Positions 6,831 through 46,650 of a stretch of 47,047 nucleotides of DNA are shown one piece after another (position 1 is the first letter of the stretch; every line of letters starts with the position of its first letter). The position numbers and the translations under genes were made by a program. Location: NCBI RefSeq assembly GCF_001194135.2, contig NC_068989.1, positions 54,904,136 to 54,951,182 of the forward strand, given 5' to 3'. Origin of the DNA: Octopus bimaculoides. Taxonomy: Eukaryota. A model generated the notes under the pieces. It worked only from the letters and a program-made list of their open reading frames with translations. It was not told where the DNA came from and did no database searches.

Positions 6831-7532
6831 TTATCCTATTATCCTACGGTGCCTTACAACCTAACCCTTCACAATCACATAATGAAAAAAAAATAAATAA
6901 CAATAAAAGTTAAAAAATTGAATAAAGAAATAATTTTAAACAAATTTTAAAAAGTCAAGGGGGAACAAAAAAGATTTTGTTTTTTAAATTACATGAAGCA
7001 ACAAGATTTTGCCAAGAACCTTAGATTAGAAAATCAAACCGAATAATTGGGAACCAATGAAATCGTTTGTTCTCGGATGAGGATTTGTTTTATCGCGTCA
7101 CGGGTTTCATACAACGTGGTGTGGTGGTACATGTCGAGAACTGGATAAATGTGCAAACTGCAGTTAACGGTTTCTCACCGTTCTCGGGTTACAGAGTCTT
7201 TGTTCAGAGCTTCAGCAATAATAAATAGAACCACGCTACTTGCACACAGCAGTCTTGGTTAGCGTGAGTCCTCGGTGGTAGAGGGCCTTTAATATCGGGA
7301 AAAGACACTATTTTGGAGAAGAATGAAAATGTGTTAGAATTCGGCAATGTTTAGTTTGTTTACTGGTATAGTACATGACTTCAGCTTCATTAGTCTTCAT
7401 TCTGTCATTCATTCACTTTCTTTTTTATTTTTTATTCTTTTTATACTGTTTGGGACCAATTGCGCATACAGAAAAAGTAGCAATTATATTTATATTCAAT
7501 TCAAAATTTCAGAATGCGTATGTATATATATA

Positions 7533-7575
<43 letters not shown>

Positions 7576-9195
7576 TGTGTATGTGTGTATGTGTGTAGTC
7601 ACGGATAACCAAATTTTTCTAAATTTATCATTTATAGAGCTCGTCTCTCGTTGTCTTTGTGATTCTCTCTCTACATCTATCTTCGCCCCTTTTTTTCATA
7701 AAATCTCTCTTTCACCACATCTCTCTGTCATTATCTATGTCTTCCTCTTTTCTCTCTATCTCTCTCCCTCTCCCCCCCTCTCTCTCTCTTTCTTTCTCAA
7801 ATACAATGTAAATGAAAAACTAATTCTTAAAACTGATCAGAATCGGAGCATTCATGTCTTTCAAGTTTGTCCGATCGTTTGAGTTTTCAGTTTGTCTCCC
7901 TTCGTTATCTCTGTCCTATTCTTTCTCCCTCTCTCTTTATCTGTTTGTTTATGTCAGTCTCTTTCATCTCCTTTCTTTCTCTTTCACACACTCTCACTCT
8001 CACGCTCTCACTCTCACTCTTTCAGACATATTCTGTACTATAACAGAGAAGTAATTCTCGAATTTATGAAGGAGTCAGACGTTTCTTACTACATAAAGCT
8101 GTGTGTGTGTATGAGTGTGTGCGCAAGAATGCGCGTGTGTGTATATACATGTGCATATGTGTGTGTGCCTGTGAGTGTATCTCGTTTCAAACATTTCCAT
8201 TCTCTTTGCATATTTCTCTTTCACTCTAACTCTAACATTCTTTTTTACTATATCCCTATGGAAACTGTTTACACGGTCGAGTGATCTTCTAGAAATAGAA
8301 ACCAAATCTCCCACAATTTACAACTTGACTTCTTAAAATATAAATGTTATTTTTTAATGTAGATCCTAAAATAAAGAAATAAGAAAAAAAATTAAATAAA
8401 AACAAAGATAAAAAATATAGAGAGAGGCGATTAGAAAACTTCTAAATATATAAATTTCCTTGATCAGGAGTGAATTGGAGCTAAAGCAAGCTCCGAGAAA
8501 TAGCAACCATATTTATCAAAAATCACAGACTACTATTTTATAAAAAAAAAAAAATAACGTGATTGGATGAAGTGATCTCAGAAATACAGTCTGACAGAAA
8601 AAAAGCGGGCTGTCACGACTGGAAAGCCTTTCACAATGAATTGTTAGACCAAGGTGTACCTGACACGAAACAACAACACAGGAATATGCCAAATAATTTT
8701 CTCCCATATTTATGCTTCATTATTTTTCTTTCTCTTCTCTTTCTTTTTCACACTATTTTCCAGATTTCGTATTCTCGTTAATTTTCATTAACTTTTGTGT
8801 TCTGTCTTCCATTTCCTGCTCCGTATACTTCTGCTCCACTCACTTTCTGTCTCCTGCAAATTTGTCTATCTATCTATCTATCTATCTATCTAGCCATCTA
8901 TCTATCCATCTATCTATCTATCTATCTATCTGTATGTATGTATATATGTATGTATGTATGTATGTATATCACATTAAGGGCATTACAATACATAAATGCC
9001 TCACGCTATAAGGGACTCTTAAAGTCAAAACTACCATAATAAATATAGTGTACCGAACGTGAGGGAATGCAACTCTAGATGTATGTTTCTTACCACACAG
9101 CCATGCCTGCGCCTATATTATGTATGTATGTATGTATGTATGTATGTATGTATGCATGTATGTATGTGTGCGTGTATGTATGTATTTATGTACAT

Positions 9196-9540
9196 ATGCG
9201 AGATCTGTTTGAAAAGTAACGGGACTAGTGTCACAAAAAGTTTATTTCAATTTCAAACAACAAACAGCGTAATTTCCCCTTCAAAGTAATCCCCCACGAG
9301 TCTAATGCATTTTACCATCCTTCTCTGCTACGCTTCTATGCACTGCTGGAAGGATTCATCTGGGACGCCCCTCAGCTCCGTCGTTACCGCCCTCTTGATG
9401 GTCTCCACGCCTTTCAAATGGGTCCCCTTGATGATTCCCTTTAGCTTAGGGAAAAGGTAAAAGGCACACGGAGCAAGATCAGGTGAACAAGGAGTTTGTT
9501 CTAATATGGCGATGTTCTCGTCCAGGAATTGCCTGTGTTT
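9196..9540 (-). mobile_element. Mariner transposase C-terminal relic with one TIR
   Basis: Minus-strand translation ILEQTPCSPDLAPCAFYLFPKLK...FQQCIEA*QRRMVKCIRLVGDYFEGE (YSPDLAP and GDYFEG motifs). TIR-like GCGAGATCTGTTTGAAAAGTAACGGGA near 9198-9225. Confidence 0.9.
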
Positions 9541-9719
9541 ATACGCTCATTTGCTACCACGGGATGGCGTCCGAAGTAAGGTCCCTACACAATGTCGAGA
9601 GCTAGAGAACAACGAATGTCCCAAACCAGGTGAGATAACTCGTCTCTAGATGACCGAGAATGGTAGTTATTGATATTTCGTCATTATTGTGCCGAAATAT
9701 CGATATATATATATAATTT

Positions 9720-10094
9720 TATTCTTTTATTCTTTTACTTGTTTCAGTCATTTGACTGCGGCCATGCTGAAGCACCACCTTGAAGGGTGTTAGTCGAGGA
9801 AATCGACCCCAGGACTTATTCTTTGTAAGCCTGGTATTTATTCTATCGGGGGCATAAGCACACCAGCATCGGTTGTCAAGTGACGGTGAGAGGGTAACTA
9901 CAGACACACACAAATACACACAAACACACACACATACACACATATATATACGACGGGCTTCTTCCAGTTCCCGTCTACCAAAGCTACTCACAAAGCTTTA
10001 GTGGGCCCGAGGCTATAGAAGACACGTAGTGGGACTGAACCCGGAGCCATGCGGTTGGGAAGCAAGTTTCTTAGCACACAGCCACGCCTGCGCC
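9720..10094 (-). mobile_element. Near-full-length CORE-type tRNA SINE (octopus OR-like)
   Basis: Minus-strand head GGCGCAGGCGTGGCTGTGTG, B-box-like GGTTCAGTCCC, CORE-like TATAGCCTCGGGCCC...GCTTTGTGAG, internal (TG)n, and a tail ending AAAAGAATAAAAGAA. Confidence 0.9.
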
Positions 10095-11771
10095 TATATT
10101 ATTTATGCATGTATGTATGTATGTATGTATGTATGTATGTATATGTAGGCGGGTATGTATATTTATATACATTTATATATAAATATGTATATATACATAC
10201 ATAGTTTCGGCTATCGTCGGATGATGGCTTAGCCGGTCGAATCTTCGAAGTCACTGTCAGCAATATTCTTATTTAAGAATAATAAATTTATATTCTTCAG
10301 AAGTATAGGGGAACCCATCAGATTAATGTAGAATTGTTTTTATTATAACTGAACATGGAAATAAATATTCATTCATATATGTGAGTGCGTATGTGTGTGC
10401 GCGCGTGTATGTATACATTTATATATGCATATACATCAATATGTTCATATACATATATAGCTTCGAGTGTGAGTGCGTGTGCGAGTGCGTCTGTGTGTGT
10501 GCGTGTGTGTATATATGTGTATTTCCGTGTGTGTGTGTGTGTGTGTGCGTGTGTGAGTGTGTGTGTGTGTGTGTGTGTAAATACGATCCAAGGATCCGAG
10601 AAATTTTGTTAAGCTTCAAGCAATAGGCGGCTAGAATATAGAACAAAAATAAAGAGTACAAGATAAGGCATAATAACAATTCATTGCCGTTTTAAGTTAC
10701 ACACTTTTTCCCATACCGAAGTTACAACGAATTTTGATAAGCCGATAGTTTGTTTACAACTCGCTGTTAACTTATACTGTAAAAATGCACCTAATTTTCG
10801 ATTATATATACACATACATATATGCATATATACAAATGCATACATGCATGCATGCATGCATACATACATGTACGTATACATGTATGTATTATGTGTATGT
10901 ATGCATGGGTGTATGTGTGTATGTATGTGGCTAAGCTACCGTCATTACTCTTGCGTTTCTGCATTTTCAAGCATCCTTTGCTAATCACCATAGCGAAACA
11001 AAAACAATGAACATCACTGATGAAAATATAAGATGTCTGAAGAACACACACTCCCCAGTTGGTGGTCGGGTTTCACATTAATCACGTCTGAAATAAACAG
11101 AAAAAGAAAAAAATCGGCAAAAACTAAAGCGATGTGACAGAAAAGATAGCTCATAGGATAGTGTCGGAAAGAGGTAATAATTGTTGGTAAATAGATAAAC
11201 GTTTAATTATATAGACATGTTCACGCATATATTCGTACGTACATATATGCACATATATACCCATATAGAAAACCATATGTGTATCTATGTACATATACAT
11301 ATATGTGCGTACCTACCTACATAAACACATAAAGTCACGTACATTCACTTACGTACATACGCACATACAGAAGTAAGAACAATCATGCTGCATATATGCA
11401 TTCATGCATATATGCATACTTACATTCATATATGCTTGTATGCATACATACACACTTACATAATAATATACACAAGCATACATACGCGCATACATACATA
11501 CATGTAACTAAAAAAAAACACACTTTTAGGACTTATAAATAACAAACTAATGAAAAATATGCCGTTACCCCATCTGGATTATAGCTTTACGTTAATGGCT
11601 ATCGGACGCTTCGATACTTATCTAACGACCTTTGCCGTAATCTTGAGAACTTGGGTTTCACAGTAGCCGTAAGAACACGAATAATTAGAAAATTACAGCT
11701 ACAATCCATTAGAAGCACGNNNNNNNNNNTACAGAGAGAGAAAGAGAAAGAGAAACAGACAGACACACAGG

Positions 11772-11818
<47 letters not shown>

Positions 11819-12204
11819 CTATAGATATAGATATATACACACACACACACGTGTACACAGGCGTGCATTTGTATGCGGAGATATAATTGAATCAAAACAG
11901 AGAATCACACATGCTGTAACATGCTTGCTGTGTCTTGATGTTATGGCATGCGTGATTCCACATCCGCATGTATGAGATTTCATATATGAATGCGGTCATA
12001 CAAACATGCATAAGTATATGTATATATGTGTACACGCAGATGTATATGCGTGTATATATTCGTAGATACAAGCCTGCATACACGAGTTCCTGCTTGTATA
12101 CATATCCTGTTAAATGTTATTGTAATTTATATGAAGGAGTTTTGTTTTGGTTTAAAAATTGACTCCTTCTCTATTGAAGGAAGTCATTTGAAGACTAAAA
12201 TAAA

Positions 12205-12690
12205 AATTACATACAAATATACATACATAAATACATACATATACGCATATATACATACATGCATGTGTGCATACATACATGCATGCATACATAAACACAC
12301 ATACATACATACATACATACATACATACATGCATACATACGTACGTACGTACATGCATGCGTACATACATGCATGCCAGTACGAACGCACACACACATAC
12401 ATACATACATACATACATACATGCATACATACATACATACATACATAAATACATACATATACGCATATATACATACATGTGTGCATACATACACGCATGC
12501 ATACATAAACACACATACATACATACATACATGCATACATACGTACGTACGTACGTACATGCATGCACGTACGAACGCACACACACACACATACATACAT
12601 ACATACATGCATACATACATACATACATACATACATACATACATACATACATACATACATACATACATGGGTACGTACGTACATACATAG
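12205..12690. repeat. Compound (ATAC)n microsatellite with an internal ~218-bp duplication
   Basis: The same interruption pattern recurs at 12241 and 12459. Confidence 0.9.
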
Positions 12691-14348
12691 AATAGATGGG
12701 AAAATAATAAGTGGGCGGAAGCATTTTTACTAGTCGTATTTCGAAATTATTGTCTTACTTTGAGCTTCTTGTTAACCTAATATAACAGTAGAAACTTCAG
12801 AAGCGGTTAAACAATGCTATTCACAAATACAAACAATGAGAATTGAAATATTGCATATCTGACTTGGCAGAAGTACTGTAAACGATTGAGAGAAAAGATA
12901 ATGCAAATATATGCATATATATATAAACACTCAAGCGCATATTCGTGTATGCATGCAGATATGTATACATAAATGTGTGTGCGTTTATATATATATATAT
13001 ATATATATATACATACATACATACAATACACTGGGGAGTTAAGTGTGAAATGCCTAATGAGAATGTATAGTGCAGATAGGTGGATGTGTAGTGTTATATG
13101 CTTGATCCAAGAGCAGCAAGCTTGACTGATTTCGTACATGTTTAGCATCAAGGACACTTCAACGACAACCGCAGAGAAAAGTAAGCTGGTGTTTCAGATA
13201 TCGTAGCCAATACGTTGTTTATATAATATAATGTGGGGCGGTACGGTAGAAATCATTGAAGCATGAAGTATTGATGGCTTAGTTCAAAGGAGTGTTTGTT
13301 GGCTCTTTATGATAAAGGCGTGTCGTGTAGTTACCAATAATGTAATAACCATGCCACTAACGATAATAGGCGTGGTTTTGTTTTTTATTTCATTTTCAGA
13401 TATTTCATTGTAAGGCACATTAATACACCCACTGGGGTGGCGTAGTATAAAATAACCAATAACTGTGTGATGTCTGTATTGATGTTAGTAGAAGCGTTAC
13501 ATAATGTCCGTCTTCATAGATCAATCTGCAGAGCATCCTATTCTTATATGTTGACCTTGGAGGTAATGTGAGGGTCGAGGGTTCGAGACCCTCTGTAGGT
13601 TTATGTTTCTTTCATCTTGCTACTTCACCAGAAACAGTTCCTGGGAGAAAGCTGGGAAATGAGTGTGAAATAAAAAAAAATCGATCACACTTAAAGCGGT
13701 TTCCCAAGATAACCATAGTCTCTGACTAAAATCAGTAAAAGTAAAAGTAAGGTAAATGGAGAAAATAATAGTTTCTTGTGGAGAGAGATATGTCCTTTGG
13801 TCAGCAGTTTGAAGAGAGGGGGGGGGGGCTGCCGGTTAAATCGACCATAATTCATTACTGGTACTTAACTGGTTGAACCTGGAAGGATGAACCTACAAAT
13901 AAATAAACATTTGTCCCATTAATACAAGAACTGGAGAATTTGGACTGGAGTTGATTGGATCGCCTATCCCCATCCCAGAGCATGATCTGATGCTTGATTT
14001 CTTAGGACAGGTTCGAACTCAGAATGTAGAATATCAAAACTAAATTGTATTAGAGCTTAAATCAACTATTCTACTACTTTATATTACCCTGTCTTCCTGT
14101 TTACAATACTTTCTTACTTTGACACAAGAATCCTGATTTATAGAAAACACACCTGAGTATATCGATTATCAGTTTATTACGGATAAATTGTCAATCTAAG
14201 CCTTGTGTAAATGAAAGCCAAAGTGAACACCTTTGGGATTTGAACTCAGGACATAGCACAACTTAACTAGATACTGCAGCATTGTACTTTGCTCAGTACC
14301 TTTCCAATTTTATCACCACTCCGTTGCCTGCTAGTGTATTATTTGTCA

Positions 14349-14494
14349 CAATCATGGGCAAACTGCGGCCCGGGTGACTTTCCGAATGGCAAGCCTAATG
14401 AAAAATTACCTTGAATTTTCTTAGTAGTGCGGCCTCCCTGATAATGAGCCATGCCTTATGCGACCAGCTTCTCGAAAAATGTTTCTCATGCCTG
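14349..14494. mobile_element. Old hAT (Charlie-like) MITE
   Basis: Left end CAATCATGGGCAAACTGCGGCCC; right end reverse-complements to CAGGCATGAGAAAC. The 8-bp flanks ATTTGTCA and ATCAATCA match at 5 of 8 positions. Confidence 0.65.
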
Positions 14495-14639
14495 ATCAAT
14501 CATATAAGGTGTGACAACAGAATTTAAGAGTAAGAGAAAAAGTACTGAAGAAATACTGACGTAGAGTGATGGACAATGCAGAGTAAAAGAGAGCATTCCT
14601 GTCAAATGAAGGTCACCATTCGATCACGATTCTCTGCTT

Positions 14640-15091
14640 CGGGGCTTCGTTTTATGTAAAACCAAACTCTAAATCTCCTTCAAATCACACACAACTGTTT
14701 TTAAAAATGAAAGAACATTTTGGATAATACAGTCCGAGAGACTTATGCAGGAAAAAGATGGAAATTACTGGAATGGTTTTACTAACAATCTGCTGATTAA
14801 GGAACTGTCTTTGGTTAAACAACAACAGCAACAACAATTAAATGGTTGTTTCTAATATAGGTACAAGGCTTAAATTTGTGACAAGAGCATAGTCGATTAT
14901 TTTGACCCTAGTATTTTACTTTATTCCAGATGGATGAAGAGCAAAGATTTTAGTCGGCGGGATCCTTAGTTCAAATACAAACGTCGTAAACAGGAAGACG
15001 ATGGTATCGACTCACTGCTTTTGCTAGCCCTCAGCAAAAATTAATTTGGAACCCATTATTATTACTACTATTGCTGCTGCTGCTGCTGCTG

Positions 15092-15135
<44 letters not shown>

Positions 15136-16165
15136 GCTACTACTACTACAATTCAGATAGCGAGCTAGAAGTATCGTTAGCACGCCAGACAAAATTTGTC
15201 AAAAAGCCGAAACAATGCAAAGTGAAAATAAAGACTAGCAGTTAATGATTTACATAGTATTTCTTCGATATTTCAGAGTTAGAGCCTTTTCATCAGGACA
15301 AGTAGAGAAACTGGAGATGGTGTAGAGTTCTTATTTTCGCTCAGATGTGTGAGAAATGATATTAACATTTGCAGACTGGTATTGTAATAGTAACCATGCT
15401 ACCGCATGTTGTTCTTGTCTGTTATTTAATGGCCGCAACATAAGCAATCTTAGAATCAAGAAGGCTATCATAATTATTAAGTCTAAACCTTCATTAGTAA
15501 ACAGACAAGAACTAGGCTATCGCCTAGACAAGAACTAGGCTATTGTCACTATTGTAAAACCAGTATGCACAAGTCATTACCACATCTTACATATTTGAGC
15601 ACGCATAACAACTCTAAACCATCGACCATTCATTTATCAATGTATCCTGATAAAAGAATTTTAACACTAAAATATCGAAGAAAACAAAGGTAAAACTAAA
15701 ACTGTTGTTCTCTTTTCACTTTTGTATTTTTTCCATTTTGCATTGTTTCGGCCTAGGAAAAAGTTTTAATCTAATTTGATATCACAGAATGCTTCACCTA
15801 AACTACTTTATACTACTTCAGTTTCATATTCCTATGTTCCAGATTCAGACACGCCAGAGCAAACGTTGCCATGCATCATACAGAAGTCGATAAGGTTATT
15901 AGTTATTTGATAGTGTTGTTGCTGCTGCTACTCTCGCAGCTGTTATCGTGGGTGGTGTTGTTGTGGCTCAACCTCTGGTCAGCCCTTCTCTAGCAGACCT
16001 ACCATTCCAGGTACCCAGCCATGACCCACCTGCTTCAAAGGTATTTCTTGGATATTATCCAACGTCACCTTGGAGACTATCCAACGTGTAAGGAGTTATT
16101 TGATGGAGATTTAGCCGTAATTTTGTAGCAGTTCAAGAAACAATGTAGATGTTTTCTCGTAATGG
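14640..16165. repeat. Two old copies of one unclassified repeat in opposite orientation (~14640-14835 and ~15955-16165)
   Basis: Shared blocks in register: GTTGTTGT..AACC, AGCAGA, ATTCCAG, ATTATCCAA, ATTTGA.GGAGATTTAG. Confidence 0.45.
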
Positions 16166-30133: not shown

Positions 30134-30714
30134 TTCTATATACAACTAGCTNNNNNNNNNNNNNNNNNNNNNNNNNNNNNNNNNNNNNNNNNNNNNNNNN
30201 NNNNNNNNNNNNNNNNNNNNNNNNNNNNNNNNNNNNNNNNNNNNNNNNNNNNNNNNNNNNNNNNNNNNNNNNNNNNNNNNNNNNNNNNNNNNNNNNNNNN
30301 NNNNNNNNNNNNNNNNNNNNNNNNNNNNNNNNNNNNNNNNNNNNNNNNNNNNNNNNNNNNNNNNNNNNNNNNNNNNNNNNNNNNNNNNNNNNNNNNNNNN
30401 NNNNNNNNNNNNNNNNNNNNNNNNNNNNNNNNNNNNNNNNNNNNNNNNNNNNNNNNNNNNNNNNNNNNNNNNNNNNNNNNNNNNNNNNNNNNNNNNNNNN
30501 NNNNNNNNNNNNNNNNNNNNNNNNNNNNNNNNNNNNNNNNNNNNNNNNNNNNNNNNNNNNNNNNNNNNNNNNNNNNNNNNNNNNNNNNNNNNNNNNNNNN
30601 NNNNNNNNNNNNNNNNNNNNNNNNNNNNNNNNNNNNNNNNNNNNNNNNNATAGATAGATAGATACATACATACATACATATATAGGTATGTAGATAGATA
30701 GCTAGCTAGCTAGC

Positions 30715-30772: not shown

Positions 30773-31055
30773 TTCTATCAGACTCTTTCACCGAACCGCT
30801 AGGTTATGGGGACGTAAACACACCAACATCGGTTGTCAAGTGATGGTGGGGCACAGACACGCACGCGCACACACACACACACACACATATGTATACGACG
30901 GGCTTCTTTCAGTTTCCGTCTACCAAATCCACTCACAAAGCTTTGGTCGGCTTGAGGCTATAGTAGACACTTACCCAAGGTTCCATACAGTGGGTCTGAA
31001 CTCGGAACCATGTGGTTAGGTACCATGCTTCTTACCACACTGCCACTTCTGCGCC
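30771..31055 (-). mobile_element. CORE-type SINE, tail truncated
   Basis: Head and core are well preserved; the 3' part is replaced by (GATA)n. Confidence 0.9.
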
Positions 31056-31166
31056 TATAGCAGTAATTCATAAAGAACTTTGTCAGTTTGCAGTGGATTC
31101 CCTTCACTCATGTTAGTTAATGACCATGAAATTAATAAAAAAAATTTTTTATAAGATATAAGTTAT

Positions 31167-31474
31167 AAATAAGATGATAATCTATTTTCAAACGCATGAC
31201 TGCTGATATAACAGCAGGAATATTCGATATGATGTCCTTACAAAGCGGAAAAATTTGTCAGCAACTAGCCCTGAGACTCGAACTCACATCCCTCGAAGTT
31301 TCCAGCCAAGTGCTTTACCAGTTAAGCTAAACTGCCCGGAAACTTCAAGCGATGTGAGTTCGGGTCTCATGGCTGGCTGCTGACAAATTTTTCCGCTTTG
31401 TAAGGTTATCATATCCAATATTCCTGGAGTTACATCAGCGGTCATGCGTTTGGGAATAAATCATCATCTTATTT
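31167..31474. repeat. Fold-back element: 137-bp inverted arms and a 34-nt loop, containing a tRNA-like Pol III unit on the minus strand
   Basis: Arms 31167-31303 and 31338-31474 align without gaps, with about 17 mismatches by eye. Minus strand carries A-box TAGCTTAACTGG, B-box GTTCGAGTC and a T5 run. Confidence 0.92.
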
Positions 31475-32184
31475 GTATCTTGCAGTACACATTTCAACGC
31501 TTATAAAATAACAAACGTTAGTTTGTTTACATTTATAGTCATATGTGTGTGTATGTGTATGTGTGTGTGCGTACACACACATACACACACATATACAAAC
31601 CTTTGTTAGTTGACCAGGCAAGCTTAACTAAATATATTAATCTGATGTCGTTAATAAACCGAAACATACGTCCATAGTTATCTTTTGCCCCGTAGCAATG
31701 ATGAATCACCCCTCTAAGCTAAAAAACTAACTTTGAGAAATTAATTTTCTAAAATTATCTTTCCTTATTTTGGGAGCTGCATATACAATTCTAAGTAGGG
31801 TTTTGTTTCCTTTCTCCAAGGTGGAACATTAAATGAATTAAGAACTTCCTTGTATGGTACTCAGTACATTATTCCTTAACTTTCTAATGCACAGAGTAAG
31901 ATTAACTGGAGAGGGAGAGAGAGAGTGACGAAGAATAGAAGAGGAAAAGAGAGAAAGATAGAAAATTAGTAAGAGAAACGAGGGAGAGAGGGAGAGGGTA
32001 AAAATGTTGTTGACTCTGCTGCGCTAAAATGACGCTGGACAGGTGCTCTGTCACTCTTGTAATACTCAGTTTTGCCGGTGAAGTGAAATGGAGCAACGTG
32101 ATATACAGTGCCTTGTCAAAGAGCACAGAATACCCTTCGGACTGGGAATCGAACCGACGACCTTATTATCGAGTAGCCAATATA

Positions 32185-32700: not shown

Positions 32701-33713
32701 GAAGGGAAAGACAAAAGAGCAAAAACAGCAACAAAAATATCCAACAGGGCCGACGAGAGAGCAAGAGATTGAAAAGGAAGATTTTGAGACATATAAATAT
32801 AACGCTTATGTAACAATACAGAATAGTCTATAGCCGTTCTTTAAATGTTTGTGGTCTTGTGTCATCCTAATAAATCAATAAAGGTATTTATCTATATTCT
32901 TTTTTTTTCCTCTTGTACTTGAGTATAAAGCGTGAAATATATAAAATTCGTAACAAAAGTGTTTCGTTATTTTGATGTATNNNNNNNNNNNNNNNNNNNN
33001 NNNNNNNNNNNNNNNNNNNNNNNNNNNNNNNNNNNNNNNNNNNNNNNNNNNNNNNNNNNNNNNNNNNNNNNNNNNNNNNNNNNNNNNNNNNNNNNNNNNN
33101 NNNNNNNNNNNNNNNNNNNNNNNNNNNNNNNNNNNNNNNNNNNNNNNNNNNNNNNNNNNNNNNNNNNNNNNNNNNNNNNNNNNNNNNNNNNNNNNNNNNN
33201 NNNNNNNNNNNNNNNNNNNNNNNNNNNNNNNNNNNNNNNNNNNNNNNNNNNNNNNNNNNNNNNNNNNNNNNNNNNNNNNNNNNNNNNNNNNNNNNNNNNN
33301 NNNNNNNNNNNNNNNNNNNNNNNNNNNNNNNNNNNNNNNNNNNNNNNNNNNNNNNNNNNNNNNNNNNNNNNNNNNNNNNNNNNNNNNNNNNNNNNNNNNN
33401 NNNNNNNNNNNNNNNNNNNNNNNNNNNNNNNNNNNNNNNNNNNNNNNNNNNNNNNNNNNNNNNNNNNNNNNNNNNNNNNNNNNNNNNNNNNNNNNNNNNN
33501 NNNNNNNNNNNNNNNNNNNNNNNNNNNNNNNNNNNNNNNNNNNNNNNNNNNNNNNNNNNNNNNNNNNNNNNNNNNNNNNNNNNNNNNNNNNNNNNNNNNN
33601 NNNNNNNNNNNNNNNNNNNNNNNNNNNNNNNNNNNNNNNNNNNNNNNNNNNNNNNNNNNNNNNNNNNNNNNNATATACATATATATGTATATATATATAT
33701 ATACATATATATG

Positions 33714-37006: not shown

Positions 37007-37375
37007 TATAGAATGCTTTTGATTGATCCAAATTGATCAGAGCACTCCCGAAGCCAGTTTTGGTTCCAGCCCTCTCTATGATGTATCGCATAAGGTAGAG
37101 GTTGTCGTGTATAGACCTGCTCGGGATTGCGCACATTTGCGCTTCTCCGACCAGGCTACCGATGATTAGCGCCAACATTTTCGTTAACACCTTGGCCAAA
37201 ATCTTAAACTCTGTGTTTAGCAGAGTTATAGGCCGAAAATTCTCTAGTACGTCACCATTGTCGGTGTCCTTCCTCAGCAGTGTCACCACACCTCTGCTAA
37301 CAGCACTAAGAGTTTTCCCGTTCTGTTACCAGTTTCGGTAGACGTCTGTCAAGAGGTCGCCAAACAAATCTAGCA
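37007..37375 (-). mobile_element. L1/Tx1-clade LINE RT fragment, running into an assembly gap
   Basis: GVVTLLRKD...ENFRPITLLNTEFKILAKVL...IPSRSIHDNL...LINLDQSKAF. Confidence 0.9.
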
Positions 37376-42899: not shown

Positions 42900-44029
42900 T
42901 GTTTCTTTTTCAAAAATAAATATCTTGTACGTTTACGTATTACTTCCAGATATTCAGTCTGTTTTCGTTTTCTGAAGCTAGTTCTACGGGGTTTAATATC
43001 TCTCGGTGCTAGCACTTCAAACATCATAGAAGACTTCCATTGGTATTAACCTTCGTTCTTGTGTATGTGTTATCTTTAACTGGTTAAGGTGTCTCTTATG
43101 TTCCGAACGTTGTCCTTTAATCAAATACATCATGTTAACTAATCTTTTGATTACGCAGCCATCCTCCCAACCTTTGCCTTATAATATTTCTTGTATTTCC
43201 TTCAAATGTATTTTTTTGTCTTTCCTTTATATGTATTTTTCCCTGGCAATAATTTATTGAAGATCAATTTTATTTTACGCGCGAACACTAACTCTGCTGG
43301 TTACTTTCCTGAATTCGTATTTGGATTTGTAGTTATTCTATACGCTCTCAAAAATTTTGTTAGTACCTCGTCATTATCTAGCTCTTTCCGTGATTTTCTT
43401 AGAGCTCTTTTGAACGTGTCGACAAATCTTTCTGCTTGCTCATTTCTCCTCGGGTGGTAGAGCGGCGTAAAGATGTTCTTTATAGCATGTATTTTGCAGA
43501 AATTTCTTATTTCATATCCCGTGAATTGTGTTCCATTATCTGAAACTAACGTATCTGGATCACCGTATAGACAAATAAATAGCTCGAGTAAGTAGTTTAT
43601 TGTTGTCTTTGCTGTGGGTTTATTACATCTGCACACCTCTGACCACTTTGTATAACTATCCACAACGATTGGATAGTATGCAGCGTTCACTGGTCTAGCG
43701 TGGTCGATATGTATCCTGGACCATGGGCTCTCAGTCTCCGACCACGATTGGTATTTTACTGGTGGTACTTTGGTTGCCAATGCGCAACCTTTACATGCTT
43801 TTATCAATTCCTCGATGTCCCTGCCCATAGTCGGCCAGTAAACAAAGCTCCTCATTAAAGATTTCATTCTGAATATTCCCGGGTGCCTACGGTAGAATTG
43901 TTGCCATACTCGTTTCTGTAATGCATTTGGTACTACTACTTTCTGCGCGCATTTTAAGACTTCGTCGCAAAGTGAGAAATTATTTCTTTCGTTCTTGCAA
44001 TGTAAATATCCTCTATCGATTACACACAA
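42900..44029 (-). pseudogene. pol: Gypsy integrase
   Basis: HPGIFRMKSLMRSFVYWP...CKGC zinc-binding region; DDE motifs WSRIHIDHA, LVSDNGTQF and QAERFVDTFK. Confidence 0.93.
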
Positions 44030-44049
44030 TAATTCTTACATCATTTTTT

Positions 44050-45600
44050 GACTGCAATTGCGCTATCACGGTCTCTTCTAGCGATTCCATGCTCTTGGGA
44101 ATTGGCCTCAATAAGCAGTCTGCATGATCAATTTTCTTCGACGGAATATACTGCATCTTAAAATTGTAGTTCAGCAATATTGTACCCCAGCGTTGTAGTC
44201 GGTTCGCTGTATGGGCAGGGAATCACTTCTTTGATCCAAAAATTGATAGGTCGGTTTGTAACAAAGGTCGGTTTGTAACAAAGAAATTCTACCATGGAGA
44301 AATTTGTGAAATTTTTTTACCGCAAAAATAATCGACAGAGCTTCCTTCTCTATCTGACTATACTTTTTTCCGCTACTATCAGGGAACGTGAAGCATGAAC
44401 TATTGGCTTCTTAATTCCATCTTTATACTTGAGTAGCAAGACTGCTCCTATGCCATAATCCGAAGTATCTAACGCTACAACAATGTCCATTCTAGGATCG
44501 AAATGTGCTAGTGACAAGTCAGGAATTCGAATTTTCTTTATGTCTTCAAATGCGGTTTGGCACTTTACTGAGCGATTCCATTTTACTTCTTCTTGTAGTA
44601 AATCGTTCAATGGTGCTCTCAATTTATGTATATTTGGAATGTACTGTTGATAGTAAATATCTAGGCCAAGGAAAGCTTGTAATGTCCGTATATTCGTTGG
44701 GGGAGGCATATTCTTGATTGCGTCTACCCTCGACAGGTCAGGATGGCTTCCATTCATATCTATGATTTGACCTAGGCATTTGATTTTAGGTAAAACAAAT
44801 TTACACTTCTCTTCTCTGTGTGTGAAACCATAATCCTTAAATTTTTTAAAGACACAGTTCACGTGTTCAATATGTTCATTCCGCGATTCGCTTTTGATTA
44901 AGACGTTATCAAGGTAAGGAATAGCAAATTGACAGTCTGCCAACATCACGTCCGTCACCTGTTGAAATATTGCAGGTGCTACCTTCTGTCAAAAAAGTAG
45001 TCTATTGTATAGACCTCTGTGCGTATCGGCCGTTAACAGCTTTGATTATGTTTTATCTACTTTGATTAGTAGATATACGTCTGACAGATCGAGTTTTAAC
45101 AATATTTTACCTCCGTTTAATTTTGCAAAAATATCTTCTGGGTTTGCTAGTGGATGATGGTTAATTTTTAAACAGTCATTTAAACCGGTCGAAAAATCGG
45201 CACAACCTAATTTTGTTATTTTTCTTTTCTATGCTTACAGTCGGAGCTACCCATTTCGCGTAATCCACTTTTTCAATGATTGCTTTTTTTTTTTTCAATC
45301 TGTCCAACTCATCGTCCACTTGTTTTATTGCCGCAAAAGACACTTTCTTCTTAGGCTTGAACACAGATGTAATGTTATCATCTAATTCAAAACACGCTTC
45401 AATCTTTGTGCATAGAGCTAGTTTGTCCGAGAGTTCATGCGGAAACATTTTTACCATTTTCTCTTTTACTCTTCAGAAGAATTATTTTCAGAGGGACAAC
45501 CATTAATGTTTTTACAGAAGAGATTTATGGGCAAATTTCACTGTTTTTCTCAACATAAGTCTCCCTATTTTCTTCTATGTTTCCATATTTATTATTGAAA
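44050..45600 (-). pseudogene. pol: Gypsy pol: protease, RT and RNase H (disrupted)
   Basis: WVAPTVSIEKKNNKIRLC, PYLDNVLI, LQAFLGL and LDTSDYGIGAVL...HASRSL; a 17-bp tandem duplication at 44248-44281. Confidence 0.9.
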
Positions 45601-46650
45601 TATCACTCAGTCTCCACTTGAAGTAAAATATGTATTCCATTTATTTTTACGTGTACGAAATTTCTTATTTGGGAGTCGATTTTTGTTTCTGCTGAGAGCA
45701 CTCTAGTATTTTTAACGTTTGACCTTCGTAATTTTGTTCTGTAGTGTGAATTCTTGTGACGAATTATTTTGCAACTGTAACATTTTAGATTTTTAAATGG
45801 AAAGTTTTTTTCTGGAATGTATGCCCCCACATCCATTACTTGGATTGGGACGCGGCACTCTTTTTGGTTGTACTTCTTCGGTTAGCATATCTATATTTTT
45901 GAGGGATCCTTTTCTTAAATTTTTCTACATTGCGTTTCAGATTTACCATCCTTTGGCATTCTTCTGCCACGGACTGTAAGGTTAGATCTTGGTTCGCTTG
46001 TTCCAATTCAGAAAGAATTCTTACCCGAATTACTGTATCTTCGCTTGCTGTAAGGCCTTGTAAGAAAATTAGACACTTGACCATCTCAGGGGTAAGATTT
46101 TTGAGTTTAAAACTTTCACACATTCTGTTGACTGTTCCTGTATATGTGATAAAATCACCATTCTCTTTTTTAGTTATATTCCAACACTCCATTCTAGTGT
46201 TAAATAGAGAATTTTTATCACAGAATATGTTAGTAATTCTATTGTTTCCTTAAAACAAATTTCTTTGTTTTTTTTTGTTTTTTTTTTTGGTGTGGGGAAT
46301 ATGAAATTACAGTAACGTTCATGCTCTAACGGAACTAATTTTCGCAATAAAAATATCCCTTTTTGTTCGTCCGACCATGATTTGCAATCTTGCTTTAATA
46401 TCTCCTCGTACCTTCTGTAGTACGATGCAAAAGTTATACTCTTCTCTGGGTTATAACAGAATTCATTAATCGAGTTCGAAACGCCGTCTGGCGAAAACGA
46501 ACTTCCCTCATTTTTGAACTTCTTTGAATATAGCTCGAATAATTGTTGTTGTAGTTGTTGCTCCAGTACTTGCTTCTGCAATTCCTGTTGCTGTTCTTGT
46601 TGCTTTTACAACTGTACTAAGGAAACTAATAGGTCTTCCATTATTTAACA
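45600..46650 (-). pseudogene. gag: Gypsy gag (frameshifted)
   Basis: FASYYRRYEEIL, EHERYCNFIFP, KCLIFLQGL, and a degenerate knuckle CYSCKIIRHKNSHY. Confidence 0.85.

What the first reader, a model, noticed from the sequence alone, without database searches (positions are those of the whole stretch)
31167..31474. Fold-back element whose loop completes a tRNA-like Pol III transcription unit
Seen: 137-bp arms (31167-31303 and 31338-31474) pair without gaps, about 88% identical by eye, around a 34-nt loop. Read on the minus strand from 31337, loop plus left arm give GGGCAGUUUAGCUUAACUGGUAAAGC...GUGAGUUCGAGUCUCAGGGCUAGUUGCUGACAAAUUUUU. This has a consensus A-box (31329-31318), B-box (31283-31275), D and T hairpins, an acceptor-like stem (GGCAGUU/AGUUGCU) offset by 4 extra nt, and a T5 terminator. 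The A-box occurs only in the loop, so only one strand has a complete promoter. Inference: this is either a non-autonomous palindromic transposon that captured a tRNA or SINE head, or a unit that yields a ~90-nt Pol III RNA, with any read-through transcript folding into a long dsRNA (endo-siRNA or ADAR substrate, relevant given extensive A-to-I editing in coleoids). It matches none of the three SINE families in this window. I recall similar tRNA-cored palindromes in other marine invertebrate genomes but cannot verify this.
Basis: partly seen in the sequence, partly recalled or inferred. Interest (0 to 1): 0.78.

Follow-up and report, generated by a model that had tools for sequence, protein, structure and literature searches.

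The report
Head-to-head pair of tRNA-headed repeats
The fold-back is real, but it is an old, silent, one-off head-to-head pair of two copies of a tRNA-headed interspersed repeat, so it is an ordinary transposon remnant; the repeat family itself has an unusual palindromic insertion habit.

Summary
The inverted repeat is real. Arms 31160-31308 and 31333-31481 are 149 nt, gapless, 86% complementary, with a 24-nt spacer. Contigs from three independent DNA runs tile it. The minus strand of the spacer plus left arm is a degenerate tRNA-like sequence (Rfam tRNA 24.3 bits, below the 29-bit cut-off) followed by T5.

Each arm is a copy of one ~290-nt repeat: a tRNA-like head, T5, and a ~200-nt tail ending near 31537. 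The left copy is full length. The right copy is 5'-truncated in the anticodon loop, which is why the A box is unique.

The head occurs about 200-300 times per genome in five related species. This particular junction is single-copy (0, 2 and 2 spanning DNA reads at about 0.7x). It is present at the orthologous locus in three other species and has no RNA-seq reads in three runs.

Most other copies also carry an inverted, 5'-truncated partner against the head, but at other breakpoints. The commonest breakpoint is right after the acceptor stem. A few copies show head-to-tail joints.

This is the tandem/inverted insertion pattern described for Penelope-like retroelements. The most likely origin is self-primed or dual-primed reverse transcription at insertion, followed by apparently neutral decay. 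A fold-back DNA transposon remains a rival. I found no support for a working Pol III gene or an editing substrate.

The parts
31259..31337 (-). Degenerate tRNA-like head of the full-length (left) copy. Homology to other family copies stops at 31337, one G upstream of tRNA position 1.
   Evidence: Rfam tRNA 24.3 bits, below the 29-bit cut-off. 55-65 of about 85 reads per run leave the locus at 31337. The family consensus is called a 75-nt cloverleaf by ARAGORN.
31309..31332 (-). Spacer ('loop') of the inverted repeat. It holds the D arm with the A-box-like TAGCTTAACTGG and carries a locus-specific 1-nt insertion at 31321.
   Evidence: the repeat finder. The 31321 base is left out in about 97% of family contig depth.
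31160..31308 (-). Left arm: anticodon 3' side, T arm (B-box-like 31284-31274), acceptor 3' strand, T5 (31253-31249) and the tail of the full-length copy.
   Evidence: and direct reading of the sequence.
31333..31481 (+). Right arm: a 5'-truncated copy of the same repeat, starting in the anticodon loop. It has a B-box-like sequence (31357-31367) and T5 (31388-31392) but no D arm or A box.
   Evidence: At 31370 and 31375 it keeps the family consensus where the left arm has mutated.
31482..31537 (+). Continuation of the right copy's tail beyond the gapless inverted repeat, ending ...AACAAACGTTAGTTTGTTTACATTTATA. Similarity of other copies stops at 31534-31537.
   Evidence: Depth and loose ends. 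The flanks beyond this point differ between copies.
31120..31159 (-). Probable degenerate continuation of the left copy's tail (CTTATAAAAAATTTTTTTTATTAATTTCATGGTCAT). It lacks about 18-23 nt that the right copy and other copies have.
   Evidence: Gapped alignment only; weak, AT-rich.
31541..31600 (.). (TG)n/(CA)n microsatellite abutting the right copy's end. It may be the insertion target or a tail.
   Evidence: Several other copies also abut CA/TG repeats, in either orientation.

Best explanation
The locus is a head-to-head pair of two copies of one ~290-nt interspersed repeat. The repeat has a ~75-nt tRNA-like head, a T5 run and a ~200-nt tail. The left copy (minus strand, 31337 down to about 31120) has the whole head. 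The right copy (plus strand, 31338 to about 31537) is 5'-truncated in the anticodon loop. The D arm/A box is therefore present only once and forms the 'loop'. That much is shown. What follows is inferred. Both copies were laid down in one insertion event by a reverse transcriptase that self-primes or primes from both target strands, as proposed for Penelope-like elements. The cDNA that reached the RNA's 5' end was continued as, or joined to, an inverted 5'-truncated copy. In most family members the join sits right behind the acceptor stem, where the tRNA-like cDNA folds on itself. Here it fell in the anticodon loop. The arms would then have started identical roughly 20 My ago, before this species split from three relatives, and have decayed without visible constraint. 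The locus is not detectably transcribed and is not a mobile unit as a fold-back.
For: The structure is real and the junction is single-copy. The head is repeated about 200-300 times per genome in five species: read depth is 170-250 against about 0.7-1 for unique flanks, and contig depth is 7,000-16,000 against 25-58 for single-copy sequence. The tail is also repeated, and the similarity of other copies ends at 31534-31537. Both arms share a 34-nt tail segment (31400-31433) that other copies lack (joint 31399->31434); the surrounding stretch (31412-31443) has depth of about 1-5% of the core, so the arms are sister copies. An inverted partner against the head is the rule in the family. After 31337, 65-72% of reads continue with AGTAACAAATTCTTCTGCAAT, a 16/17 match to the 3' trailer ACAAATTTTTCTGCAAT (0 of 2000 shuffles reach this score). 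In species B the continuation is GCTGACAAATT, an 11/11 match. Other breakpoints occur in the T stem (7 RNA reads) and at 31457 and 31466 (species D contigs). Head-to-tail joints (31337 joined to 31530 on opposite strands) occur in species B and D. Orthologous contigs in species B, C and E span the fold-back colinearly at about 92% identity. The Jukes-Cantor distance between the arms is 0.156, against 0.079-0.088 between orthologues. Five arm mismatches are private to this lineage and uncompensated. Three RNA-seq runs give no reads on unique parts of the locus. [quoted passage not shown] Penelope elements are abundant and recently active in Octopus vulgaris (PMC13282606).
Against: No autonomous partner was identified, and the tail could not be compared with any Penelope or LINE 3' end. 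No target-site duplication is visible. No hammerhead ribozyme was found. There is no direct partial tandem (pLTR) at this locus. The T5 run directly behind the head means a Pol III transcript could not carry the tail, so the template RNA would need another promoter. The commonest family junction is so uniform that it could be inherited from a palindromic master rather than re-made at each insertion; that would favour DNA-level mobility. Other copies were seen only through read and contig summaries (30-nt loose-end consensus sequences), never as full sequences. One arm position pair (31217/31424) shows a pairing-preserving double change in species B.
Confidence: 0.55

Rival explanations
1. The family is a fold-back or MITE-type DNA transposon whose long terminal inverted repeats flank a captured tRNA gene with its T5 terminator. 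This locus is a copy whose palindrome centre was remodelled, for example by hairpin-templated repair, so that the arms swallowed the 3' half of the tRNA.
For: Family members are palindromic around the tRNA-like core in at least species A and B. The outer ends are constant while the centres vary. The T5 directly after the head looks like a genomic tRNA gene, not a SINE head. The commonest junction is uniform across species.
Against: No target-site duplication or recognisable terminal motif is present at this locus. Head-to-tail joints and partners truncated at many different points fit 5'-truncation of a retroelement better. The inner part of the arms is not younger than the outer part: 8/45 against 13/104 mismatches. 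The fold-back as it stands here never amplified.
Confidence: 0.2
2. A single ordinary copy of the repeat was locally duplicated in inverted orientation by a replication template switch or fold-back repair. The event would be unrelated to the element's own mobility.
For: The junction is unique in the genome. Both arms carry the same rare 34-nt tail segment. Divergence is uniform along the arms.
Against: Inverted 5'-truncated partners abutting the head recur across the family at several breakpoints and in several species, so the arrangement is tied to the element. The breakpoint coincides within 1 nt with the 5' end of the head, and both copies run to their own tail ends.
Confidence: 0.12
3. The locus is a working unit. 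Pol III makes a ~90-nt tRNA-like RNA from the minus strand, or read-through transcripts fold into a ~150-bp dsRNA that feeds siRNA or A-to-I editing pathways.
For: A- and B-box-like motifs with a T5 run lie at the right spacing on the minus strand. A 322-nt transcript would fold at about -200 to -210 kcal/mol. The locus has been retained in four species. There is one pairing-preserving double change at 31217/31424.
Against: The tRNA score is below the Rfam cut-off and the fold is no better than shuffles. This copy's A box has an extra base and its acceptor stem is degraded relative to the family consensus. Three RNA-seq runs give zero reads on the junction or unique arm parts. Between-species divergence of the locus (about 7.5-8%) includes at least 5 uncompensated arm changes. 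Retention over about 8% divergence is what neutral DNA does.
Confidence: 0.05
4. Two independent insertions of the same repeat landed back to back by chance.
For: Each arm looks like a separate copy with its own tail end.
Against: There is zero distance between the copies. Both belong to the same rare 34-nt-bearing variant. The arrangement recurs in the family.
Confidence: 0.03

Closest known systems
Insertion architecture of Penelope-like elements (PLEs): pseudo-LTRs plus an inverted 5'-truncated copy at the 5' end
   Same: A full-length unit has an inverted, 5'-truncated copy immediately adjacent to its 5' end, in head-to-head orientation. The junction is palindromic. The family also has occasional partial head-to-tail tandems, and copy ends often abut microsatellites (PMC8557442, PMC3846280).
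   Different: There is no RT/GIY-YIG ORF and no hammerhead ribozyme. There is no direct pLTR at this locus. The unit is only ~290 nt and starts with a tRNA-like sequence. No sequence link to a PLE 3' end could be tested.
tRNA-derived SINEs (for example the octopus OK/OR families and CORE-SINEs)
   Same: A tRNA-related head with A- and B-box-like motifs is followed by an unrelated ~200-nt body. The repeat is dispersed at a few hundred copies, and a 5'-truncated copy is present.
   Different: A T5 Pol III terminator sits 10 nt behind the head. Most copies have conserved sequence (an inverted partner) upstream of the head. Copy number is about 500 times lower than that of the neighbouring SINE at 30893-31058. 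No target-site duplication or LINE-type tail was shown.
Fold-back elements and palindromic MITEs
   Same: Long inverted arms surround a short centre, there is no coding capacity, and the family-level centres vary.
   Different: No target-site duplication or transposase-type termini were found. This fold-back is single-copy. The arms behave as 5'-truncated copies of a polar unit, and the family also has tandem joints.
Helenus / TRIMp3 (tRNA-like sequence inside the LTRs of non-autonomous LTR retrotransposons; PMC10886601)
   Same: A tRNA-like sequence is embedded in a repeat with conserved flanks on both sides. Helenus is known from molluscs (bivalves).
   Different: Helenus has direct LTRs with a primer-binding site and polypurine tract between them and 4-5 bp target-site duplications. 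Here the copies are inverted and abut each other, with no internal region.
Twin priming of L1/Alu
   Same: A second priming event during target-primed reverse transcription gives an inverted 5' segment joined by microhomology.
   Different: Twin priming inverts a different, upstream part of the same RNA. Here both arms cover the same 3' part, which makes it an inverted duplication.

Membership tests
Functional tRNA gene | Cloverleaf scoring above curated thresholds, with U33 and an intact acceptor stem | tested here: not met
   Rfam scores are 22.5 and 24.3 bits against a 29-bit cut-off. ARAGORN finds nothing at default settings. The anticodon region is irregular, and the acceptor pairs only with a 4-nt offset.
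tRNA-derived SINE | tRNA-related head with internal A and B boxes | tested here: met
   TAGCTTAACTGG is present here; the family form TAGCTTAATGG matches 10 of 11 positions of TRGCNNAGTGG. AGTTCGAGTCT compares with GGTTCGANNCC. This is sequence resemblance only.
tRNA-derived SINE | The whole unit can be transcribed by Pol III (no internal T4+ terminator) | tested here: not met
   A T5 run lies at 31253-31249, 10 nt behind the head. It is conserved in the family (high depth at 31380-31395).
tRNA-derived SINE | Copies begin at the head, with unrelated flanks upstream | tested here: not met
   65-72% of the reads that reach the head's 5' end continue into a conserved sequence, which is an inverted copy of the 3' trailer.
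tRNA-derived SINE | Target-site duplications and a 3' end shared with a partner LINE | tested here: inconclusive
   No direct repeat flanks 31120/31160 to 31481/31543. No LINE library was available. The window's LINE RT fragment (37007-37289) shows no similarity.
Penelope-like element (non-autonomous derivative) | Inverted 5'-truncated copy immediately adjacent to the 5' end of a full-length unit | tested here: met
   This is seen at this locus and recurs in the family at other breakpoints.
Penelope-like element (non-autonomous derivative) | Partial direct tandem (pLTR) | tested here: inconclusive
   There is none at this locus. One contig each in species B and D joins a tail end to a head (31337 to 31530 on opposite strands).
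Penelope-like element (non-autonomous derivative) | Hammerhead ribozyme in the repeat (canonical clades; absent in Naiad/Chlamys) | tested here: not met
   The Rfam scan of 30800-31800 at E up to 10 lists no hammerhead family.
Penelope-like element (non-autonomous derivative) | 3' end homologous to an autonomous PLE with RT and GIY-YIG endonuclease | not testable with these tools
   No cephalopod genome or repeat library could be searched. Scans of the three contig collections found nothing.
Fold-back / MITE DNA transposon | Terminal inverted repeats flanked by a fixed-length target-site duplication | tested here: not met
   The inverted repeat is present, but no target-site duplication is found at any plausible terminus. 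This is one old copy, so the test is weak.
Fold-back / MITE DNA transposon | The same structure is present at many loci | tested here: not met
   The junction 31337|31338 is single-copy: 0, 2 and 2 spanning reads at 80% likeness, and one contig at 95%. Palindromic relatives have other junctions.
Helenus / TRIM | Two direct LTRs with a primer-binding site and polypurine tract between them | tested here: not met
   The copies are inverted and abut each other, with no internal region. The defining features are taken from PMC10886601.
Hairpin source of small RNAs / ADAR substrate | Transcription across both arms | tested here: not met
   RNA runs X24-X26 give zero reads on the junction or the unique arm parts. 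Each run was sampled at about 6% and is poly(A)-type cDNA. No small-RNA data were tested.

The most novel reading that the evidence does not exclude
The family may be a previously undescribed kind of non-autonomous retroelement: a tRNA-headed unit mobilised by Penelope-type reverse transcriptase, not by a LINE. On this reading the tRNA-like cloverleaf nucleates self-priming of the cDNA through its acceptor stem. It may also define the RNA's 5' end through RNase P, standing in for the hammerhead ribozyme of canonical PLEs. Insertions would then be born as long hairpins with a tRNA-like tip. The window's locus would be one such birth with a shifted fold point.
Probability: 0.25. Interest if true: 0.6.

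Novelty: new member of a known kind. Interest (0 to 1): 0.3.

Why it matters
For this locus the result is a clean negative. A striking 150-bp hairpin with a complete Pol III-like unit turns out to be an old, fixed transposon remnant. It is untranscribed in the three poly(A)-type RNA-seq runs examined (small RNAs and Pol III products were not tested). It should not be annotated as a tRNA gene, a hairpin RNA gene or an editing substrate without direct evidence. The family is of modest wider interest. About 200-300 tRNA-like sequences per octopus genome sit at the tip of inverted repeats and will be miscalled as tRNA pseudogenes, SINEs or MITEs by automated pipelines. If the link to Penelope-type mobilisation holds, it would add a tRNA-headed class to the known small-RNA-derived non-autonomous elements (LINE-dependent SINEs; LTR-dependent Cassandra, Helenus and Ajax). 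It would also give a natural system for studying the self-priming step of PLE integration.

Tried and rejected
1. I looked for other copies in the window by blastn with word size 7 and by searching for the two family flank consensus sequences. There were none.
2. I scanned the metagenome, viral and prokaryote-genome contig collections for the family core GTGAGTTCGAGTCTCATGGCTGG. There were 0 hits, so no other copy could be fetched as sequence.
3. I translated the open antisense frame of the family consensus and searched the 5.8-billion protein set, hoping for spurious ORFs on octopus contigs. No candidate was found.
4. I considered the Helenus/TRIM reading (tRNA-like sequence in LTRs) and rejected it: the copies are inverted, abut each other and have no primer-binding site or polypurine tract region.
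5. I considered a possible empty-site allele (joints 31154->31572 and 31150->31545) and rejected it. Both sides lie in low-complexity sequence, the shorter side is only 21-22 nt, and in X3 the filled contigs are at full single-copy depth.
6. I ignored the mir-297/mir-466 Rfam hits at 31534-31605. They are sub-threshold matches to a TG/CA microsatellite.
7. I looked for a younger inner part of the arms, which palindrome-centre extension would predict. It is not seen: 8/45 inner against 13/104 outer mismatches.
8. A full compensatory-change test on the orthologues could not be completed.

Full report
**Observation**

The arms are 31160-31308 and 31333-31481: 149 nt, gapless, 86% complementary, with a 24-nt spacer. 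There are 21 mismatches, 13 of them transitions, spread evenly along the arms: 8 in the inner 45 nt and 13 in the outer 104 nt.

The structure is not an assembly artefact. Logan contigs of three independent DNA runs from 2015, 2022 and 2025 tile 31050-31336, 31308-31380 and 31367-31568 with 0-1 differences at single-copy depth.

Read on the minus strand, the spacer plus left arm gives a tRNA-like sequence. Rfam RF00005 matches 31259-31336 at 24.3 bits (E=0.0017 in a 91-nt search; 22.5 bits in the 1-kb search). This is below the 29-bit gathering score.

ARAGORN calls nothing at default settings. The 91-nt RNA folds no better than shuffled sequence (z=+0.32).

The A-box-like motif lies only in the spacer. 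B-box-like motifs and T5 runs lie in both arms. No other copy is in the window.

**What each arm is**

I laid reads of three genomic runs of the same species on the region at 80% likeness. About 1.9 Gb of each run is read, and unique flanks have depth of about 0-1.

- The tRNA-like core and the T5 region have depth of about 170-250.
- The outer arms have depth of only about 3-15.
- A tail-end module at 31445-31508 has depth of about 25-50.

Contig depths agree. At 95% identity the D-arm region has about 12,700 against about 45 for single-copy sequence, and the T-arm region about 7,100.

The head therefore belongs to a family of roughly 200-300 copies. The same holds in four other species, coded B to E.

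The similarity of other copies continues past the end of the inverted repeat at 31481, through ...CTTATAAAA..AACAAACGTTAGTTTGTTTACATTTATA, and stops at 31534-31537. Beyond that the flanks differ from copy to copy.

Species D contigs show that the middle of the arms is also homologous to other copies...CCAATATTTCTGCTGTTCTAACAGCGTTTCTGCATTCGAA|AATAAATC.

A gapped alignment suggests that the left copy has the same tail end in degenerate form, down to about 31120. It is missing about 18-23 nt.

Each arm is thus a copy of one ~290-nt unit: head, T5, and a ~200-nt tail. The left copy (minus strand) is complete at its head. Its homology to the family stops at 31337, one G upstream of tRNA position 1. 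The right copy (plus strand) starts in the anticodon loop. This explains why the A box is unique and sits in the 'loop'.

Both arms carry a 34-nt tail segment (31400-31433). A species C contig lacks exactly this segment (joint 31399->31434), and depth over 31412-31443 is only about 1-5% of the core. The two arms are therefore sister copies and not two random family members.

**The head**

I rebuilt a family consensus from the majority letters and loose-end consensus sequences:

GGGCAGTTTAGCTTAATGGTAAAGCACTTGACCGG(A/T)AATCA(A/C)AGGGATGTGAGTTCGAGTCTCATGGCTGGCT

ARAGORN calls it a 75-nt cloverleaf, at default settings for one variant. The acceptor strands pair in the normal position.

The window's copy has an extra base at 31321. 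It also has mutations at 31271 and 31266 that damage the T stem and acceptor stem.

From memory, the D arm and the CCGGA in the anticodon loop resemble tRNA-Arg(CCG). I did not test this.

**Is the fold-back a family trait?**

The answer is both yes and no.

*This junction is unique.* On a 56-nt stretch centred on 31337|31338, only 0, 2 and 2 genomic reads span it in the three runs. That is the single-copy expectation. Only one contig per run spans it at 95% identity.

*An inverted partner against the head is nevertheless usual in the family.*
- 55-65 of about 85 reads per run leave the locus at 31337 and continue with AGTAACAAATTCTTCTGCAAT. This is a 16/17 match to the element's own 3' trailer ACAAATTTTTCTGCAAT (0 of 2000 shuffles reach this score).
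- In species B the continuation is GCTGACAAATT, an exact 11/11 copy of the trailer.
- Species D gives a weaker match and species C an insignificant one.

In the commonest form the partner therefore starts right behind the acceptor stem, and the whole tRNA-like part is the loop of a long hairpin.

Other breakpoints also occur:
- in the T stem (7 RNA reads of a paralogue);
- at 31457 and 31466 (species D contigs).

One contig each in species B and D joins a tail end directly to a head, which is a head-to-tail tandem.

**Age and constraint**

Contigs of species B, C and E align colinearly across the flanks and the whole fold-back at single-copy depth:
- 31063-31530, with 35 differences and 4 gaps;
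- 31063-31473, with 34 differences;
- 31063-31410.

The structure therefore predates these species splits. The Jukes-Cantor distance between the arms is 0.156. Between orthologues it is 0.079-0.088.

On the octopus TE clock used in PMC13282606 (JC 0.09 is about 25 My), the arms would have been identical roughly 20 My ago.

At 31163, 31166, 31182, 31201 and 31225 the three orthologues carry the base complementary to this species' right arm. At least 5 of the 21 arm mismatches therefore arose here after the split, and none is compensated.

One pair, 31217/31424, shows a pairing-preserving double change in species B. I cannot tell chance, arm-to-arm gene conversion and selection apart from one site.

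**Expression**

Three RNA-seq runs were each sampled at about 6%. They give no read on the junction or on the unique parts of the arms. The reads that fall on the core carry 6-11 or more differences and come from paralogues.

These libraries would not capture a 90-nt Pol III product, so that possibility is untested, not excluded. No read-through dsRNA was seen. With no reads on the locus, editing could not be scored.

**Mechanism**

The family pattern has four parts:
- a polar unit whose 5' end is joined to an inverted, variably 5'-truncated copy of itself;
- a palindrome at the junction;
- occasional partial tandems;
- ends that often abut CA/TG microsatellites in either orientation.

This is the pattern described for Penelope-like elements. 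[quoted passage not shown] Arkhipova et al. interpret palindromes at head-to-head junctions as self-priming (PMC3846280). Penelope families are numerous and recently active in Octopus vulgaris (PMC13282606).

I therefore favour origin in a single retro-insertion, with self-priming or priming from both strands. The tRNA-like acceptor stem would be the usual fold-back point, and the anticodon loop an unusual one used at this locus.

These steps are inferred. No partner element, target-site duplication or hammerhead was found. The T5 behind the head means the template RNA cannot be the Pol III transcript of the head.

The main rival is a fold-back or MITE-type DNA transposon that captured a tRNA gene with its terminator. 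It explains the T5 and the uniform commonest junction better. It explains the tandem joints and the many breakpoints worse. Local replication-based inverted duplication and a working RNA gene are less likely.

**Comparison and verdict**

The locus is not a tRNA gene; it falls below the thresholds. It is not a canonical SINE, because it has an internal T5 and conserved upstream sequence. It is not a Helenus-type TRIM, because there are no direct LTRs. It is not a transposing fold-back as it stands, because the junction is single-copy.

It behaves like a PLE-type complex insertion of a small non-autonomous unit. Membership could not be tested for the defining feature, which is a shared 3' end with an RT/GIY-YIG element.

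For the locus itself the result is ordinary: an old, fixed transposon remnant that is silent as far as the data go. The family is mildly interesting and worth a proper genome-wide curation.

Noticed in passing
window 30893-31058 (minus strand), with a (TG)n/(CA)n tail at 30852-30892: A tRNA-derived SINE with a CORE-like CTTGGGTAAGT motif lies directly next to the fold-back. Read depth is about 120,000 against about 1 for unique sequence, so it has well over 10^5 copies per genome. It is also abundant in RNA reads.
   Followed up: partly
window 31217 and 31424 (pairing partners in the two arms): Species B's orthologue has A and T where this species has G and C, a pairing-preserving double change. 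Species C has only the 31424 change, and species E has the 31217 change. This could be arm-to-arm gene conversion, chance or constraint.
   Followed up: partly
reads and contigs abutting relatives of 31480-31501 (run X22): A perfect 30-nt palindrome, AGGTTCGTCCATCGATCGATGGACGAACCT (agreement 0.99), interrupts the tail-end module in at least one other copy. It is presumably the end of another mobile element.
   Followed up: no
window 31205-31294, RNA run X24: About 35 RNA reads cover this stretch, but all carry at least 11 differences (31225 G, 31230 A, 31231 A, 31232 T, 31234 A). They come from one expressed paralogue elsewhere in the genome, not from this locus.
   Followed up: partly
window 31534-31605: A TG/CA microsatellite hairpin gives sub-threshold Rfam hits to mir-297 and mir-466 (42-45 bits against cut-offs of 85-90). 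This is a low-complexity artefact.
   Followed up: yes
window 43301-44958 and 46174-46581 (minus strand): There is a Ty3/Gypsy-type pol remnant. Integrase H2C2 and rve domains lie at 43301-44029, RT and RNase H at 44350-44958, and a DUF7083 ORF lies upstream.
   Followed up: partly
window 37007-37289 (minus strand): A non-LTR (LINE-type) reverse transcriptase fragment (RVT_1) runs into an assembly gap. It shows no similarity to the fold-back's tail.
   Followed up: partly
window 11720-37006: Eight runs of N total 3,624 nt, most of them next to microsatellites. Two (30152-30649 and 32981-33672) bracket the region studied, so the assembly around it is fragmented. The fold-back itself is well supported.
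   Followed up: yes
window 31133-31151 and 31505-31540: Both copies' tails pass through an A-run followed by a T-run (A8T6 on the left; the degenerate AAAATAACAAAC-G-TTAGTTTGTTTACATTTAT on the right). Other copies have A6-11 followed by T8-15. This is a small palindrome inside the tail whose meaning is unknown.
   Followed up: partly
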